Positions 32,474-44,899 of a DNA stretch of 64,000 bases are shown piece by piece; the first letter of the stretch is position 1; each line of letters starts with the position of its first letter. A program made the position numbers and the translations under genes. The DNA is from Magallana gigas. Its lineage: Eukaryota. Below the pieces are notes generated by a model. It saw only the letters and a list, made by a program, of their open reading frames with translations, did no database searches and had not been told where the DNA came from. The stretch spans positions 4,588,001 to 4,652,000 of the forward strand of contig NC_088855.1 in NCBI RefSeq assembly GCF_963853765.1, written 5' to 3'.

Positions 32474-35400
32474 TCAGGTATCCATGGGATACACAGCCGA
32501 CGCTGTCCCTGGCGTGGCGAAGGACAATCCCGCACGTCTCTAAAAATGAACAAAGCACTGATTATAACAAAATCTGTAGGCAGTGTTACATTGTAAAAGG
32601 TTTAGCCTTAATAAAAAGCGACACAGGGAATCATAAATCTATAAATAAGTGCACAATTACCAAAAGGAAAGGAAAGACGCAGTACTTGTGAATCATTCAC
32701 CGGCATCGCGAGGTTAATGGTCGGATGACCGAAATCCAGAACATGCAAAGTTTCCTTACCCTAATTGTGACGTCCTCCTGCTCCTTCGAGCGGGAATCCT
32801 TCCAATGACCGCCTAGTAACTTCTCCGCCTTCTCCTACAAACAGATCATAACATAGTGCAAAAATAACACTTAACGCCTGATTGGAATGCATTCATATTG
32901 CGACGTATAACACTAGGTGTTCCCTACCTCGTATATCTTCAGCTTTGATTGTAGTTCTTTATTTCGTGACACATACTGAAAGAAAACGAATCAATAAAAA
33001 TCATAAAGAACGTTGATAGATTACACGTAAATTACTTCTATATTAAAACCATAAATCGCATGTATTACAGCTAAATTGACTGTATGGAGTATCCTTACTG
33101 TAATGAGCACTAAGGAAACAAAGACGACTAGGAAGAGCCCGTATGCAATGAGGAAGACGAGGAAAGCCCATTTGTCCATTGTCGCTTGTAGGTCATCGTC
33201 GAACCTCGTTATGACCGCGTGCCAGGCTATCACCAGCCAGTTAAAGAACATGTTGGCTAGGATAAACTTGTCCTACAAACATTACTACTTTGAATTTTAC
33301 ATACAAAAACACGTTAATTTATTATTATTAAAAAAATTTGTTACTTATTTAGGAAAAGTCCTTAAAATCAATATTTAGTGACAGACCAGATAGCATACGA
33401 TTTTAAGCTGACACTTGTAAAATTACCGATAAATATAGTATAATATGATTAAACATTTAGAGAATTTACAGCACTGAAACACTGACCAGGCAGGTGTGAT
33501 AGGATATTTTGGGGGAGATTAGCGTTCGTCGTCAGACGGAAGGTGACCGCCGTCAACATGAGAGTTATGGACAGCCCTAACCGGTTCTGAGTTAGGAAAT
33601 GTGGCGAAGGAAGTGACACATATAAGAGTCTGAAACAAAATAAACCTCGTGTTAACCTCAGAAAGATGAGACATAAAAGCTAAGATATACCAAGAAAGTT
33701 AATGAAATTCTTGCCATGATGACGATAACGTTCAAGACGAAGAATCCCGCGCGTCTGACTGCGCAACATACGACGGAAATGCCGGGAAATTTGGTGTTGA
33801 CGTTCCGTTTCTGAGAGAAGACTTTGGATTATGTGTAGGGTACGGAGGCCACGTAGTCACACAGGGACCACTCCTGGACGTCCACGAAGCATGACACATT
33901 GATGGTACTCAGCTCGTCCTTGTCCTCCTGGAACTCCAGATCAGTGGCGGGGAGCTCAGAGGTAATGACCAGGTTCAAATACTGCAAAAACACAAACAGA
34001 AACAAATCATATAGCATAGTTTCTGTCAAACCATTCAGTAGTGTATCGACCTGTACACATGCAGTAAAATACTAAATGCTAAATGGTAACAAACACAACC
34101 AAAAATCACGTTTATTTTTCATAACTATCAGCTTAATTGATGGTTGCGATTTAGAAGATTGATTTCTATATCTGGTACTTGGAAGTTTACGAACTGTAAT
34201 TCATTAACAGGGCAGCACAAATTAAACGCCACATTCTATGATTGCAATAGAGAGGGTATAGTTAATTAAAGTATTTAGCTCTTCCCTGTATTTAAAAAAT
34301 TAGCTAGAAAACATTCTGTTTGGTCATGCCCTGGTTGTGATAGAGAACAATCTGTTTGGTTATGCCCTGATTGTGAAAGAGAACATACTGTTTGGTCATG
34401 CTTTCAGTTTGATAGTGAAAGAGAACATTCTGTTTGGTTATGCCCTGATTGTGATAGAGAACATACTGTTTGGTCATGCCCTGAATGTGATAGAGAACAT
34501 ACTGTTTGGTCATGTCCTGATTGTGATAGAGAACATACTGTTTGGTCAAGTCCTGATTGTGATAGAGAACATACTGTTTGGTCATGCTCTTATTGTGATA
34601 GAGAACATTCTGTTTGGTCATGCTCTTATTGTGATAGAGAACATACTGTTTGGTCATGCTCTTATTGTGATAGAGAACATACTGTTTGGTCATGCTCTTA
34701 TTGTGATAGAGAACATTCTGTTTGGTCATGCCCTGATTGTGATAGAGAACATACTGTTTGGGCATGCTCTTATTGTGAGAGATTATATACCTGATATTGT
34801 TCTTATTGTTATAGAGGATACACTTTTGCACTCTCATTATGTGGTTTATAACAAACCTGGTGATCAAACGGAAAGTCCATCAGCTCTAGCTTCTCCGAGA
34901 ACTGTCCGCTAATTTTTCTTTTCTCCGTAATGAAAGCCTCACCATGGGGGTTAAAATTCAACTCTTTTAATACTTTCTTCTTCTTAGAGTCGATTACATT
35001 CTGAACAGATATTTTGGGACAAGTTCCTGTTTTCCAGATGCTGCAAAAAACGATTTACAAGAAAGAATAGTTATCTGCTTCTTATGATGTATTATATTGT
35101 TAAGCATATTTTTGAAAAAAAAAAATTTGAACTGCACATACTTGACTGTGATCCAATGCCGGTTCCCGCCATCTTGCCTGCACAAAGACATCGGCAAAGT
35201 ATTTCTCCTTGACCATGTCAATCTCCCCCACCTTCAGGAACTCCACGCGGATATAGACCGTTCTCTGTAACATGCAATAAAGAAAAGGTTAAAAAATCAT
35301 AAAGTGTAAACAGGAAGAACGGTAAAGCATGCACATGTAATAAGTCTGTAATCGTTATATCAAGGAAGTGACTATTTTTATCTACGAGACTTACCATGTA

Positions 35401-35559
35401 GCAGAGCAAAACAGTATATTACCAAACCTGAATAAATTTGATTAAAATCATTAAATACTGATGAGTAAACAACACTTTTCTTTACCAAACAGGATTTTAT
35501 CTGATTAAGGAAGTTTGTAAATATTTTGATCAATACAAAAGTCAGATTACCTTTACCAT
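32474..35559 (-). pseudogene. Cys-less pentameric ligand-gated ion channel, copy 1 (disabled)
   Basis: Same nine exons as copies 2 and 3, but with a 14-bp deletion in the loop-A exon (~35020), a premature TAA (~33831), and a 14-bp net deletion in the M1-M2 exon (~33590). Confidence 0.85.
34305..34800. repeat. 36-bp intronic minisatellite, ~14 units
   Basis: Consensus atagagaacatactgtttggtcatgccctgattgtg. Confidence 0.95.
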
Positions 35560-41200: not shown

Positions 41201-41442
41201 CATCAGCATACATTTTCATTGTTTTGAAGTTTGCGTTTGTGTTTAGCTGTTGACACCAGGTAAAACAATGAAAACATTTCTGACCATGATGTGGTTTTTA
41301 GCAAGTTTTACGTTTTTTTTACCATTCATTTATATCACAACTCTTGGTAATTATGCATGAAAATGTATATATAAAAATAAAAGGAATGTCTTTAATTCAA
41401 TATCACAATTGTATTTGGTGGAGTCCAGACGGAGGCTGTGAT

Positions 41443-44400
41443 TCATGTATCCATGGGATACACAGCCGACGCTGTCCCTGGCGTGGCGTAGGACAATCCC
41501 CCACGTCTCTAAAAATAAACAAAGCACTGATTATAACAAAATCTGTAGGCAGTGTTACATTGTAAAAGGTTTAGCGTTAATAAAAAGCGACACAGGGAAT
41601 CATAAATCTATAAATAAGTGCACAATTACCAAAAGGAACGGAAAGACGCAGTACTTGTGAATCATTCACCGGCATCGCGAGGTTAATGGTCGGATGACCG
41701 AAATCCAGAACATGCAAAGTTTCCTTACCCTAATTGTGACGTCCTCCTGCTCCTTTGAGCGGGAATCCTTCCAATGACCGCCTAGTAACTTCTCCGCCTT
41801 CTCCTACAAACAGATCATGACATAGTGCGAAAATAACACTTAACGCCTGATTGGAATGCATTCATATTGCGACGTATAACACTAGGTGTTCCCTACCTCG
41901 TATATCTTCAGCTTTGATTGTAGTTCGTTATTTCGTAACACATACTGAAAGAAAACGAATCAATAAAAATCATAAAGAACGTTGATAGATTACACGTAAA
42001 TTACTTCTATATAAACACCATAAATCGCATGTATTACAGCTAAATTGACTGTATGGAGTATCCTTACTGTAATGAGCACTAAGGAAACAAAGACGACTAG
42101 GAAGAGCCCGTATGCAATGAGGAAGACGAGGAAGGCCCAGTTGTCCATTGTCGCTTGTAGGTCATCGTCGAACCTCGTTATGACCGCGTGCCAGGCCGTC
42201 ACCAGCCAGTTAAAGAACATGTTGGCCAGGATAAACTTGTCCTACAAACATTACTTCTTTGAATTTTACATACAAAAACACGTTAATTTATTATTATTAA
42301 AAAAGTTTGGTACTTATTTTTGGAAAAGTCATTAGAATCAATATTTATTAACAGAACGATTTTAGGTTGACATAAGAAAAAATTACCAATAAATATAGTT
42401 TTCATAATTAACATTTAGAGAAAATACACCACTAAAACACTGACCAGGCGGGTGTGATAGGATATTTTGGGGAGATTAGCGTTCGTCGTCAGACGGAAGG
42501 TGACCGCCGTCAACATGAGAGTTATGGACAGCCCTAACCGGCTCTCAGTTTTGTCGCAACTGACTGCGAATGTGGCGAAGGAAGTGACACATATAAGAGT
42601 CTGAAACAAAATAAACCTCGTTTAACCTCAGAAATTTGAGACATAAAAGCTAAGATATACCAAGAAAGTTATTGAAATTCTTGCCATGATGACGATAACG
42701 TTCCAGACGAAGAATCCCGCGCGTCTGACTGCGCAACATCCGACGGAAATGCCGGGAAATTTGGTGTTGACGTTCCGTTTCCGTGAGAAGACTTTTGATT
42801 CTGTGTAGGGTACGAAGGCCACGTAGTCACACAGGGACCACTCCTGGACGTCCACGAAGCAGGACACATTGATGGTACTCAGCTCGTCCTTGTCCTCCTG
42901 GAACTCCAGATCAGTGGCGGGGAGCTCAGAGGTAATGATCAGGTTCAAATACTGCAAAAAACACAAACAGAAACAAATCAAATAGCATAGGTTGTGTCAA
43001 ACCATTCAGTAGTGTATCGACCTTTACACATGCAGTAAAATACTAAATGCTAAATGGTAACAAACACAACCAAAAAATCACATTGCAACGTTTATTTTTC
43101 ATAAAAATCAGCTTAATTGATGGTTCCGATTTAGAAGATTGATTTCTATATCTTGTACTTGGAAATTTACGAACTGTAATTCATTAACAGGGCAGCACTA
43201 ATCAAACGCCACATTCTATGATTGCAATAGAGAGGGCATAGTTGAATAAAGTATTTAGTTCTTCCCTGAATTTAAAAGATAAGCTAGAAAACATTCCGTT
43301 TGGTCATGCCCTGGTTGTGATAGAGAACATTCTGTTTGGTTATGCCCTGATTGTGAAAGAGAACATACTGTTTGGTCATGCTCTAATACTGAAAGAGAAC
43401 ATTCTGTTTGGTCATGCCCTGATTGTGATAGAGAGCATACTGTTTGGTCATGCCCTAATTGTGATAGAGAGCATACTGTTTGGTCATGCCCTTATTGTGA
43501 TAGAGAGCATACTGTTTGGTCATGCCCTGATTGTGATAGAAAACATACTGTTTGGCCATGCACTGATTACTGTTTTGGCATGCCCTGATTGTGATAGAGA
43601 ACATTCTGTTTGGTTATGCCCTGATTGTGAAAGAGAACATACTGTTTGGTCATGCTGTAATAGTGAAAGAGAACATTCTGTTTGGTCATGCCCTGATTGT
43701 GATAGAGAACATTCTGTTTGGCCATGCCCTGATTGTGATAGAGAGCATACTGTTTGGTCATGCCCTGATTGTGATAGAGAACATATGATTTGGTTGTACC
43801 CTGATTGTGATAGAAAATAAACTGTTTGGTCATGCCCTGAATGTGATAGAGAACATACTGTTTTGTCTTGCCTTAATTGTGATAGAGAACATACTGTTTG
43901 GTCATGCCCTGATTGTGATAGAGAACAAACTGTTTGGTCATGCTCTGATTGTGACATGGAACAAACTGTTTTGTCATGCCCTAATTGTGATAGAGAACAT
44001 ACTGTTTGGTCATGCTCTGATTGTGATAGAGAACATTCTGTTTGGTCATGCCCTGATCGTGATGGAGAACATACTGATTGGTGTGCTCTTATTGTGAGAG
44101 ATTACATACCTGATATTGCTCTTATTGTTATAGAGGATATACCTTTGCATTCTCATTATGTTGTTAATAACAAACCTGGTGATCAAACGGAAAGTCCATC
44201 AGCTCTAGCTTCTCCGAGAAATGTCCGCTAATTTTTCTTTTCTCCGTAATGAAAGCCTCACCATGGAGGTTAAAATTCAACTCTTTTAATACTTTCTTCT
44301 TCTTAGAGTCGATTACATTCTGAACAGATATTTTGGGACCCCAGTAGTTGTCCAAGTTCCTGTTTTCCAGATGCTGCAAAAAACGATTTACAAGAAAGAA

Positions 44401-44899
44401 TAGTTATGTGCTTCTTATGATGTATTATATTATTGAGCATATTTTTGAGAAAAAAAATTTGAACTGCATATACTTGACTGTGATCCAATGCCGGTTCCCG
44501 CCATCTTGCCTGCACGAAGACATCGGCAAAGTAATTCTCCTTGACCGTGTCAATCTCCCCCACCTTCAGGAACACCACGCGGATATAGACCGTTCTCTGT
44601 AACATGCAATAAAGAAAAGGTTAAAAAATCATAAAGTGTAAACAGGGAGAACGGTAAAGCATGTACATGTAATACGTCTGTCATCGTTATAACAAGGAAG
44701 TGACTATTTGTATCTACGAGACATATATATTTACATTGTAGTAGAGCAAAACAGTATATTACCAAACCTGAATAAATTTGATTAAAATCATTAAATACTG
44801 ATGAGTAAACAACATTTTTCTTTACCAAACAGGATTTTATCTGATTAAGGAAGTTTGTAAATATTTTGATCAATACAAAAGTCAGATTACCTTTACCAT
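41443..44899 (-). CDS. Cys-less (Pro-loop) pentameric ligand-gated ion channel subunit, copy 2, apparently intact, ~371 aa
   Basis: Exons 44891-44899 (ATG GTA AAG), 44474-44596, 44176-44373, 42685-42951 (GC donor), 42445-42600, 42068-42241, 41897-41944, 41729-41803 and 41443-41508, all phase 0 and stop-free. Ligand-domain motifs IDTVKENYFADVFVQARWREP, YWGPKISVQN and LELMDFPFDHQ; four hydrophobic segments with M2 ESRLGLSITLMLTAVTF and M2-M3 LPKISY. The first and last small exons are less certain. Confidence 0.85.
43284..44120. repeat. 36-bp intronic minisatellite, ~23 units
   Basis: Same consensus as 34305-34800. Confidence 0.95.

What the first reader, a model, noticed from the sequence alone, without database searches (positions are those of the whole stretch)
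41443..44899. Pentameric channel apparently lacking a signal peptide: possible inverted or intracellular-ligand topology
Seen: the first ligand-domain exon (RTVYIRVVFLK...) has a phase-0 acceptor. The nearest strong upstream donor (aag|gtaatc at 44890) ends an exon reading ...TGA AAA TAT CAG GAA AAA GAA GCC ATG GTA AAG, with an in-frame stop seven codons before an ATG in a strong Kozak context (gccATGG). This is conserved in all three copies (35557, 44897, 56325). The protein would start MVKRTVYIRV, directly in the first beta strand, with no hydrophobic leader. Established: characterised animal Cys-loop receptors use a cleavable signal peptide to put this domain outside the cell. Inference: this domain and the ~62-aa charged C-tail could face the cytosol, which would fit the missing disulfide and the unpaired Cys residues (SCF, LCD, GCC). 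That would be a channel gated by an intracellular ligand, or one using M1 as a post-translational anchor.
Basis: partly seen in the sequence, partly recalled or inferred. Interest (0 to 1): 0.8.

Follow-up and report, generated by a model that had tools for sequence, protein, structure and literature searches.

The report
Oyster pentameric channel without signal peptide
This oyster gene, and the whole invertebrate "Cys-less" branch of the neurotransmitter-receptor channel family it belongs to, has no secretion signal and has charge patterns that predict the normally extracellular ligand-binding domain faces the cell interior; if experiments confirm this, it would be the first such channel gated from inside the cell.

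Summary
The minus-strand gene at 41443-44899 has eight phase-0 coding exons plus a 5' leader exon. That leader carries in-frame stops, then gccATGG, then GTA AAG before the donor. RNA contigs from independent studies and a raw read join the leader (last base 44891) directly to the first ligand-domain exon (44596). The protein therefore starts MVK-RTVYIRV, inside beta-strand 1.

The protein is an ELIC-like, Cys-less pentameric ligand-gated channel subunit. Pfam domains, an AlphaFold model and PDB matches agree. It belongs to the lophotrochozoan "Cys-less" clade described in 2016 and still uncharacterised.

The missing leader is a family trait, not a gene-model error:
- Only 2 of 164 full-length relatives have a signal-like segment.
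- Five of six transcript contigs have in-frame stops upstream of the start.
- No alternative RefSeq isoform adds a leader.

Independent topology indicators agree:
- K+R is a median 16 on the ligand-domain side against 2 on the other side (larger in 163 of 164).
- Charge differences at M1 and at M4 both predict N-in and C-in.
- There is no conserved sequon or cysteine pair.

Bacterial-like relatives have signal peptides, basic M3-M4 loops and no C-tail. An inverted topology is my leading reading (about 0.55), but it is untested experimentally.

The parts
45281..45391 (-). Upstream duplicate leader exon (leader A). It has the same gccATGgtaaag|gtaatc end. When spliced to leader B, its ATG opens only an 8-codon uORF (MVKGHNE*).
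   Evidence: Exact motif copy at 45275-45297. Alignment of leaders. RNA joint 45280->45001/2 in X1, depth 19. Sequence.
44891..45002 (-). Leader exon B: 5' UTR with several in-frame stops, then the start codon and codons for V and K.
   Evidence: Translation TS***TDLS*KYQEKEAMVK. Acceptor ttttcag|gg at 45003/45002 and donor aag|gtaatc at 44891/44890. Both junctions seen in RNA.
44897..44899 (-). Start codon in gccATGG context. The nearest in-frame stop, TGA at 44921-44923, is in the same exon.
   Evidence: The same arrangement is in the Logan mRNA contig L011.
44474..44596 (-). Coding exon 1 (residues 4-44): beta1-beta2 of the ligand-binding domain, with no N-terminal helix.
   Evidence: The Pfam Neur_chan_LBD match begins at profile position 27 of 216. 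AF2 strands 4-19 and 24-36.
44176..44373 (-). Coding exon 2 (residues 45-110), ending in the Pro-loop FPFD (44182-44193). The Cys-loop cysteine positions are E and L.
   Evidence: joints 44373->44474 and 42951->44176. FPFD invariant in the family. Alignment to ELIC.
43285..44109 (.). 36-bp minisatellite (about 23 units) inside intron 2. It is not coding.
   Evidence: The same array sits in intron 2 of the other copies (34305-34782 and 54145-55532).
42685..42951 (-). Coding exon 3 (residues 111-199): rest of the ligand domain, the NVS sequon, pre-M1 RR and the start of M1. The donor is GC (GC-AG intron).
   Evidence: flank gcaaga. Loose ends at 42601/42685 carry the sequence across the junction in X1, X8 and X12.
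42445..42600 (-). Coding exon 4 (residues 200-251): end of M1, M1-M2 loop (SCDKTES), pore helix M2 with 9' Leu, and the M2-M3 loop.
   Evidence: M2 is strongly similar to ELIC M2. X1 and X8 contigs match this copy's own letters at 42550-42555.
42068..42241 (-). Coding exon 5 (residues 252-309): M3, a 12-aa acidic M3-M4 loop (1 K/R, 4 D/E) and most of M4.
   Evidence: Joints.
41443..41944 (-). Coding exons 6-8 (41897-41944, 41729-41803, 41443-41508 including the stop): end of M4 and a 60-aa charged C-tail with 11 K/R. The model shows it as a helical continuation of M4 plus a second helix.
   Evidence: Joints 41944->42068, 41802->41896 and 41508->41729. AF2 helices 279-334 and 338-358 at pLDDT about 80-92.

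Best explanation
The locus is a real, spliced and transcribed gene. It is one of a tandem array of four intact or nearly intact copies and one pseudogene. [quoted passage not shown]

Shown: translation can only start at the ATG in the leader exon, so the protein begins three residues before beta-strand 1 and has no signal peptide. This is a conserved property of the whole invertebrate clade.

Inferred: with about 190 residues of foldable beta-sandwich made before any hydrophobic segment emerges, M1 acts as a type II (N-in) signal anchor. M2 to M4 follow in alternating orientation. The ligand-binding domain, the M2-M3 loop and the basic helical C-tail then lie in the cytosol, while only the very short M1-M2 and M3-M4 loops face the exterior or an organelle lumen. 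The pentamer would be a channel, probably cation-permeable like ELIC, opened from the cytoplasmic side by an intracellular small molecule, ion or pH change. The conserved C-tail helix would serve as a cytosolic regulatory or docking element. Which membrane it sits in and which ligand opens it are unknown.
For: Gene model and start codon: with RNA joints for every intron including leader->exon 1. The minus-strand sense agrees with the read orientation in X21.

Family identity:
- Pfam LBD 1.6e-8 and TM region 1.8e-6, both above their cut-offs.
- AF2 pLDDT 83 and pTM 0.74.
- Foldseek matches to GABA-A, GlyR and ELIC with probability 1.0 and TM-score 0.6-0.77.
- Best PDB sequence match is ELIC, 3e-28.

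No signal peptide across the family:
- Orthologue N-termini are short and K-rich.
- Only 2 of 164 members have a signal-like h-region and 2 of 164 a TM-like segment before beta1.
- Five of six transcript contigs have in-frame stops 1-15 codons upstream of the ATG.
- About 45 RefSeq isoforms with alternative first exons add no leader.

Topology indicators:
- K+R is a median 16 on the LBD side against 2 on the opposite side, larger in 163 of 164.
- Even without the C-tail it is larger in 131 of 164, with 16 ties.
- The M1 flank charge difference is negative in 150 of 164 (predicts N-cytosolic).
- The M4 flank charge difference is positive in 147 of 161 (predicts C-cytosolic).
- The M3-M4 loop is a median 14 aa and net acidic.
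- 89 of 164 LBDs have no N-X-S/T sequon, and the best sequon column is occupied in only 10%.
- There is no conserved Cys pair.
- Paralogue N-extensions are polybasic and Ser-rich.

Contrast group: bacterial-like relatives P0090-P0096 have classical signal peptides, basic M3-M4 loops and no C-tail.
Against: There is no experimental topology, localisation or current for any member of the clade. All topology arguments are statistical rules and can fail. Long N-terminal ectodomains are occasionally translocated without a signal peptide (neuregulin-1 is my recalled example, not tested here).

The M1-M2 loop carries 1-3 K/R, which the inverted model would place outside. A minority of members, such as leech P0118 and P0119, have acidic C-tails after a KK. 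I had no SignalP, DeepTMHMM or eukaryotic Cys-loop control set, only bacterial-like controls.

For this particular copy, Ka/Ks against the neighbouring copy is 0.93 (26 nonsynonymous, 8 synonymous changes), and near-invariant pore residues are changed. Its own functional status is therefore less certain than the family's. Part of the RNA depth comes from paralogues that are 95-99% identical.
Confidence: 0.55

Rival explanations
1. Canonical orientation without a signal peptide. M1 acts as a reverse (N-exo) signal anchor, possibly with help from an insertase, and the whole N-terminal domain is translocated. The ligand domain and C-tail are then extracellular as in every characterised pLGIC. The basic C-tail would be an extracellular or membrane-surface helix.
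For: All known pLGICs have the ligand domain outside. The fold, the Pro-loop, pre-M1 Arg and M2-M3 coupling elements are conserved. The literature treats the domain as extracellular, and planarian homologues act in neurons, consistent with neurotransmitter-like roles (PMC9874803). The M1-M2 loop has 1-3 K/R, as expected for a cytoplasmic loop.
Against: An N-domain of 190 to over 600 residues, often preceded by polybasic tracts, is a very poor substrate for N-tail translocation. The charge difference at M1 favours N-in for 150 of 164 members and at M4 favours C-in for 147 of 161. K+R is 16 on the LBD side against 2 on the other. There is no conserved glycosylation site or disulfide. The signal-peptide-bearing relatives lack exactly these features.
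Confidence: 0.27
2. This particular copy is a young, drifting duplicate with no function of its own, on its way to becoming a pseudogene. The lack of a leader would then have no physiological meaning for this locus, whatever the family does.
For: Ka/Ks is 0.93 against the adjacent copy at Ks 0.033. One array member is already a pseudogene. The near-invariant pore residues Q(-2'), N(-1') and Q(2') are replaced by E, S and G. Much of the RNA depth is attributable to paralogues.
Against: The ORF is intact through eight exons with good splice sites. All 29 invariant family positions that I checked by eye are retained. Contigs in X1 and X8 match this copy's specific letters in exon 4 and are spliced. 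Ka/Ks against the P0001-type copy is 0.21. The counts behind the 0.93 value are small.
Confidence: 0.13
3. A signal-peptide-encoding first exon exists but was missed, through an alternative promoter further upstream, so the secreted isoform is the functional one.
For: The transcription start was not mapped. Only contigs and a 1% sample of raw reads were available. One transcript contig (L016) has a long open upstream frame.
Against: Every RNA record reaching the 5' end of exon 1 joins it to the leader exon or shows matching loose ends in X1, X8, X12 and X21. The leader has in-frame stops. Five of six transcript contigs from other species and paralogues end the frame upstream of the ATG. No RefSeq isoform in eight clusters adds a hydrophobic leader.
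Confidence: 0.04

Closest known systems
ELIC, the Erwinia (Dickeya) pentameric ligand-gated ion channel (e.g. PDB 2VL0, 8D67)
   Same: It is the best solved-structure sequence match (3e-28) and a strong fold match. Both lack the Cys-loop disulfide and the N-terminal helix and have a short M3-M4 loop. The M2 and M2-M3 regions are nearly superimposable (RLQ.SFTL.LT...LP..(S/P)Y.T..D). RefSeq names the animal proteins after it.
   Different: ELIC has a cleavable signal peptide and a periplasmic ligand domain, and it ends right after M4. The oyster protein has no leader, an acidic M3-M4 loop and a 60-aa basic helical C-tail. ELIC's loop-B aromatic residue (Phe in EPF) is not conserved; the family has a TSE(L/H)P motif there.
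"Cys-less" metazoan Pro-loop receptors (Jaiteh, Taly & Henin 2016, PMC4795631)
   Same: It is the same clade. A Crassostrea gigas paralogue found here (P0070 = K1QX27, E 3e-63) is in their dataset. It is dominated by lophotrochozoans, lacks the Cys-loop cysteines and has unknown function.
   Different: Nothing differs structurally. That study trimmed N- and C-termini (K1QX27 as residues 8-319) and never mentions signal peptides. Later papers use the clade as an outgroup or call the domain extracellular. The leaderless start, the basic C-tail and the topology implication are not described in the library I could search.
Canonical animal Cys-loop receptors (GABA-A, glycine, nicotinic, 5-HT3)
   Same: They share the beta-sandwich plus four-helix fold (TM-score 0.6-0.7), the W.P....N loop-A motif, the FPFD Pro-loop, pre-M1 Arg and 9' Leu in M2.
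   Different: They have a signal peptide, an N-terminal alpha-helix, the Cys-loop disulfide, conserved N-glycans, a long basic cytoplasmic M3-M4 loop and a very short C-terminus. All six differ here.
Channels gated from the cytosolic side (CNG/HCN, IP3 and ryanodine receptors, KATP) and the inverted pore of ionotropic glutamate receptors relative to K+ channels
   Same: These are functional analogy and evolutionary precedent only (from general knowledge). A ligand-binding domain in the cytosol controls a pore, and a channel module can be re-used in the opposite membrane orientation.
   Different: They are unrelated folds. No pLGIC has been reported with this arrangement.

Membership tests
Pentameric ligand-gated ion channel (Pro-loop receptor) superfamily | [quoted passage not shown] | tested here: met
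   Pfam PF02931 at 34.7 bits (cut-off 26) and PF02932 at 28.8 bits (cut-off 28.1). AF2 gives 9 strands plus helices at 188-211, 217-241, 250-272 and 279-334. Foldseek matches over 500 pLGIC chains with E<=1e-18 for those listed.
Pentameric ligand-gated ion channel (Pro-loop receptor) superfamily | Conserved Pro-loop (F/Y)P(F/M)D and pre-M1 Arg at the domain interface | tested here: met
   FPFD at residues 105-108 (44182-44193). P106, D108 and R186 are invariant in 30 relatives.
Pentameric ligand-gated ion channel (Pro-loop receptor) superfamily | Pore-lining M2 with 9' Leu and 6' Thr | tested here: met
   R(0')LGLSIT(6')LML(9'), aligned with ELIC M2.
Pentameric ligand-gated ion channel (Pro-loop receptor) superfamily | Assembly as a pentamer that conducts ions | not testable with these tools
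   A two-copy complex prediction gave no verdict. Needs expression and electrophysiology or cryo-EM.
Cys-loop receptors in the strict sense (animal neurotransmitter receptors) | Disulfide-bonded 13-residue Cys-loop | tested here: not met
   The flanking positions are E (7 residues before F of FPFD) and L (4 after D). No Cys pair is conserved in 164 relatives.
Cys-loop receptors in the strict sense (animal neurotransmitter receptors) | Cleavable N-terminal signal peptide placing the ligand domain outside | tested here: not met
   The protein starts MVK, then beta1. RNA joint. Signal-like segments in 2 of 164 relatives.
Cys-loop receptors in the strict sense (animal neurotransmitter receptors) | N-terminal alpha-helix, long M3-M4 cytoplasmic loop and short extracellular C-terminus | tested here: not met
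   The Pfam LBD match starts at profile position 27. The M3-M4 loop is 12 aa and the C-tail 60 aa.
Lophotrochozoan-dominated "Cys-less" metazoan clade (Jaiteh et al. 2016) | Animal pLGIC lacking the Cys-loop cysteines that groups with prokaryote- and protist-like channels rather than with the anionic or cationic Cys-loop clades | tested here: met
   Homologues are restricted to molluscs, annelids and nemerteans among named hits. The nearest solved relative is ELIC. The paralogue K1QX27 is in their alignment. I built no tree of my own.
Prokaryotic pLGICs of the ELIC/GLIC type | Signal peptide with periplasmic ligand domain, and a protein that ends at M4 | tested here: not met
   The bacterial-like hits P0090-P0096 show these features and the oyster protein does not.

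The most novel reading that the evidence does not exclude
The entire invertebrate Cys-less pLGIC clade (at least 829 sequence clusters at 50% identity) is inserted upside-down relative to every characterised pLGIC. The "extracellular" ligand-binding domain and a conserved basic C-tail would sit in the cytosol. These would then be the first pentameric ligand-gated channels opened by an intracellular signal, at the plasma membrane or on an organelle.
Probability: 0.5. Interest if true: 0.9.

Novelty: new variant of a known kind. Interest (0 to 1): 0.75.

Why it matters
Pentameric ligand-gated channels are a textbook example of extracellular chemical sensing. Their topology, with the ligand domain outside, has been taken as invariant from bacteria to humans.

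A large, conserved animal clade that lacks any secretion signal would overturn that assumption if the prediction holds, because its charge distribution predicts the opposite orientation. It would add a new class of intracellularly gated channels. It would also explain why these receptors have resisted deorphanisation with bath-applied transmitters.

The finding changes how to study the flatworm members proposed as anthelmintic targets (PMC9874803), since ligand screens would have to be done from the cytosolic face. The claim is cheap to test with tags, glycosylation scanning and inside-out patches.

Even if the orientation turns out to be canonical, the clade would be an unusual case of signal-peptide-independent translocation of a domain of at least 190 residues.

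Tried and rejected
- Complex prediction of two copies of P0001 gave no verdict. I do not use it as evidence either way.
- Earlier findings of this scan, searched by place and by words: nothing.
- Pfam scan of ten family members with 200-900-aa N-terminal extensions, looking for fused cytosolic domains as "Rosetta-stone" evidence. No domain was found upstream of the LBD. The only extra hit was DUF4706 in the C-tail of a leech protein, so this was uninformative.
- Nine literature searches for a described signal-peptide-less or inverted pLGIC. None was found. The library lacks most subscription-journal papers, so prior description cannot be excluded.
- Gene-model artefact: considered and rejected on the RNA joints and the in-frame stops.
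- Mitochondrial or other N-terminal targeting peptide: rejected for this gene because only three residues precede beta1.
- The minor RNA form through 44737-44767 (X1, depths 15-20, one non-canonical junction): treated as a paralogue or unspliced artefact. If real, it would terminate the frame after MVKVW.
- I could not run SignalP, DeepTMHMM or Phobius.
Full report
**1. What is in the sequence**

The window is A+T-rich animal DNA. The best protein matches are oyster proteins, and RNA runs labelled as oyster hold the locus.

On the minus strand between 44899 and 41443 I rebuilt the gene from consensus splice sites. It has a leader exon ending ...GAAGCC ATG GTA AAG|gtaatc. Eight coding exons follow: 44596-44474, 44373-44176, 42951-42685, 42600-42445, 42241-42068, 41944-41897, 41803-41729 and 41508-41443. 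All are phase 0. One intron is GC-AG.

The product is 371 aa. The leader translates as TS***TDLS*KYQEKEA-MVK, so the frame is closed eight codons upstream of the ATG inside the same exon. Exon 1 translates as RTVYIRVVFLKVGEIDTVKENYFADVFVQARWREPALDHSQ.

**2. RNA evidence**

I laid contigs of three RNA studies and raw polyA reads of a fourth on 41400-47399. Every predicted intron appears as a GT..AG (minus-strand) joint.

The critical joint, 44596->44891, is present in three ways:
- X1 contigs at depth 118 and X8 contigs at depth 131.
- One raw read in X21 with 68 nt on the shorter side.
- Reciprocal loose ends in X12.

No record joins exon 1 to any other upstream sequence. The X21 reads have first mates on the + strand, the usual signature of a minus-strand RNA.

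Many contigs are 95-99% alike and come from paralogues. However, X1 and X8 contigs carry this copy's own letters at 42550-42555, the SCDK codons that distinguish it, and they are spliced. The target copy itself is therefore transcribed.

X1 also shows a joint from 45280 to 45002. A second, upstream copy of the leader exon (45391-45281) can be spliced onto the first. Its ATG then opens only an eight-codon uORF.

**3. Copies**

The 23-nt leader/donor motif occurs four times in the window against none expected by chance: at 35559, 44899, 45289 and 56327.
- Copy 1 (56016-51849) is intact.
- The copy at 35273-32477 is a pseudogene, with an in-frame stop, a frameshift in exon 4 and a partly deleted exon 2.
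- A fourth coding copy lies 14 kb beyond the window end at C3:4666413-4669920. It is nearly identical to the transcript-derived protein P0001.

Ka/Ks of the target is 0.93 against copy 1 (26 nonsynonymous, 8 synonymous changes) and 0.21 against the P0001 mRNA. The lineage is therefore constrained, but the youngest duplicates may be drifting or diverging.

**4. What the protein is**

- Pfam finds Neur_chan_LBD and Neur_chan_memb above their gathering scores. The LBD match starts at profile position 27, so the N-terminal helix is absent.
- An AlphaFold2 model of P0001 (94% identical to the target, folded with a 30-sequence alignment) has pLDDT 83 and pTM 0.74. It shows a beta-sandwich and four helices. 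M4 continues as one helix to residue 334 and is followed by a second helix at 338-358.
- Foldseek returns only pLGICs, namely GABA-A, glycine receptors and ELIC (TM-score 0.6-0.77).
- By sequence the closest solved protein is ELIC (3e-28), with a strikingly similar M2 and M2-M3 region.
- The Pro-loop FPFD, the W.P....N motif, pre-M1 Arg and 9' Leu are conserved. The two Cys-loop cysteine positions are E and L.

The protein belongs to the "Cys-less" metazoan clade of Jaiteh et al. 2016 (PMC4795631). An oyster paralogue recovered here (P0070 = K1QX27) is in their alignment, trimmed to residues 8-319.

**5. Is the missing leader real, and how general is it?**

Orthologues from oysters, scallops, mussels, clams, gastropods, an annelid and a nemertean all begin with short hydrophilic, lysine-rich peptides or with longer low-complexity extensions. 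None has a hydrophobic leader.

A profile search of 1.84 billion representatives finds 829 clusters at E<=1e-30. Among 164 full-coverage members under 700 aa:
- Two have a signal-like h-region in the first 40 residues. One of these is an amphipathic helix.
- Two have a TM-like segment anywhere before beta1. One of these is a partial model.

Six transcript contigs were fetched. Five have an in-frame stop 1-15 codons upstream of the called ATG. About 45 RefSeq isoforms in eight clusters use alternative first exons, for example four different ones in Mytilus. None adds a leader.

In contrast, the most distant hits of the first search (P0090-P0096, 318-355 aa, from metagenomes) begin with classical signal peptides such as MKRVVFLLVVFVAISIQLVRSAE.

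**6. Topology indicators**

I mapped loops through a family HMM and obtained the following.
- K+R on the ligand-domain side (15 residues before M1, the M2-M3 loop and up to 60 residues of C-tail) has a median of 16. The opposite side (M1-M2 plus M3-M4 loops) has a median of 2. The LBD side is larger in 163 of 164 members.
- Leaving out the C-tail, the LBD side is still larger in 131 of 164, with 16 ties.
- The charge difference across M1 (C-flank minus N-flank) is negative in 150 of 164. By the charge-difference rule this predicts a cytosolic N-side.
- The charge difference across M4 is positive in 147 of 161, predicting a cytosolic C-terminus. The two ends give the same answer independently, as a four-helix bundle requires.
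- The M3-M4 loop is a median 14 aa with 2 K/R and 3 D/E. The C-tail is a median 47.5 aa with 12 K/R.
- 89 of 164 ligand domains contain no N-X-S/T sequon. Sequons are no more frequent than in shuffled sequence (0.72 observed against 0.89 expected).
- There is no conserved cysteine pair, and half of the domains have an odd number of cysteines.
- Paralogue N-extensions have a median of 13 K/R. They include tracts such as KKRKKRK immediately before beta1, which would hinder N-tail translocation.
- The bacterial-like relatives have basic M3-M4 loops and end at M4.

For the target itself the tally is 16 K/R on the LBD side against 2 on the other.

**7. Interpretation**

Shown:
- The gene, its splicing and its start codon.
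- Its membership of the ELIC-like Cys-less pLGIC clade.
- The clade-wide absence of a signal peptide.
- The clade-wide charge asymmetry.

Inferred: M1 inserts as a type II signal anchor. The ligand-binding domain, the M2-M3 loop and the C-tail are then cytosolic. Only a 7-residue and a roughly 12-14-residue loop face the other side.

The channel would be opened from the cytoplasm. ELIC-like M2 chemistry, and an acidic residue at -2' in the window copies, suggest cation permeation. Neither the ligand nor the membrane can be named from sequence. I put this reading at about 0.55.

The main rival is canonical orientation through signal-peptide-independent translocation of the N-domain. It keeps about a quarter of the probability, because no pLGIC has ever been shown to be inverted and because rare proteins do translocate long N-domains without a leader.

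**8. Novelty**

The clade is known but uncharacterised. The papers I could search trim the termini, use the clade as an outgroup, or describe the domain as extracellular. None mentions signal peptides or topology, and targeted searches found nothing.

The only functional data I found cited are planarian RNAi phenotypes (seizure-like movement and reduced sensory function) for two homologues (PMC9874803).

I therefore rate this as a new variant of a known kind. The observation (a leaderless pLGIC clade) is solid. The implication (an inside-facing ligand domain) is well supported computationally and directly testable.

Noticed in passing
window 45281-45391 and 44891-45002; also 56331-56525: The 5' leader exon is tandemly duplicated, with a 390-bp period upstream of the target and a 98-bp x2 repeat at 98% identity upstream of copy 1. 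RNA shows leader A spliced to leader B, which creates an 8-codon uORF (MVKGHNE*) ahead of the real start. This could act as translational control.
   Followed up: partly
window 43285-44109, 34305-34782, 54145-55532: A 36-bp minisatellite (unit TAGAGAACATACTGTTTGGTCATGCCCTGATTGTGA) fills intron 2 of every copy, with about 23, 13 and 38 units. RNA-run contigs cover it at depths of 40-110, probably from copies elsewhere in the genome or from unspliced RNA.
   Followed up: partly
window 32477-35273: The third in-window copy is a pseudogene. It has an in-frame TAA in exon 3 (PYT*SKVF), a frameshift in exon 4 and a partly deleted exon 2, yet its leader motif is still perfect.
   Followed up: yes
window 42520-42560 (exon 4) and 53430-53470 in copy 1: The inner pore mouth differs from the family. 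Near-invariant Q(-2'), N(-1') and Q(2') are E, S and G in the window copies (SCDKTESRLGL and GRDKPESRLGL). The copy just outside the window and P0001 keep LPQNRLQL. Together with Ka/Ks 0.93 between copies 1 and 2, this could mean either relaxed constraint or a shift in ion selectivity.
   Followed up: partly
window 46626-47654 (+) and 48527-49938 (+): Two unrelated ORFs lie between the channel copies. One is a 342-aa ORF resembling a MULE-type transposase, judged by eye and not searched, with RNA contigs over 46800-47399. The other is a cytochrome P450 fragment with the FGLGERRCPG haem motif, interrupted by the window's run of N.
   Followed up: no
window 42684 (donor of intron 3); same in copy 1 at 53596: A GC-AG intron is conserved between copies, and RNA confirms its use.
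   Followed up: yes
proteins P0274-P0285, P0040, P0042, P0051, P0272 (other loci): A second oyster and mollusc paralogue group carries a conserved N-terminal peptide (M-T/A-S-V-A-Y-S/N-Y/F-M), then a Ser-rich stretch, then a polybasic tract directly before beta1. Many other members have an amphipathic L..L...L helix in the N-extension. These may be cytosolic docking or oligomerisation motifs.
   Followed up: no
C-tail, window 41443-41944 (residues about 312-371): The tail motif Y-E/Q-E-K-A-x-K-L/I-L/F-G-x-x-W-K is conserved from oysters to mussels and scallops. The model shows it as a helical extension of M4. It looks like a basic amphipathic helix of the kind that binds calmodulin or lipids, which is speculation.
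   Followed up: no
window 44737-44767: A low-depth X1 RNA form (depths 15-20) inserts this intron piece between the leader and exon 1. One of its junctions is non-canonical. If real, it would stop the frame after MVKVW. It is more likely paralogue or unspliced material.
   Followed up: partly
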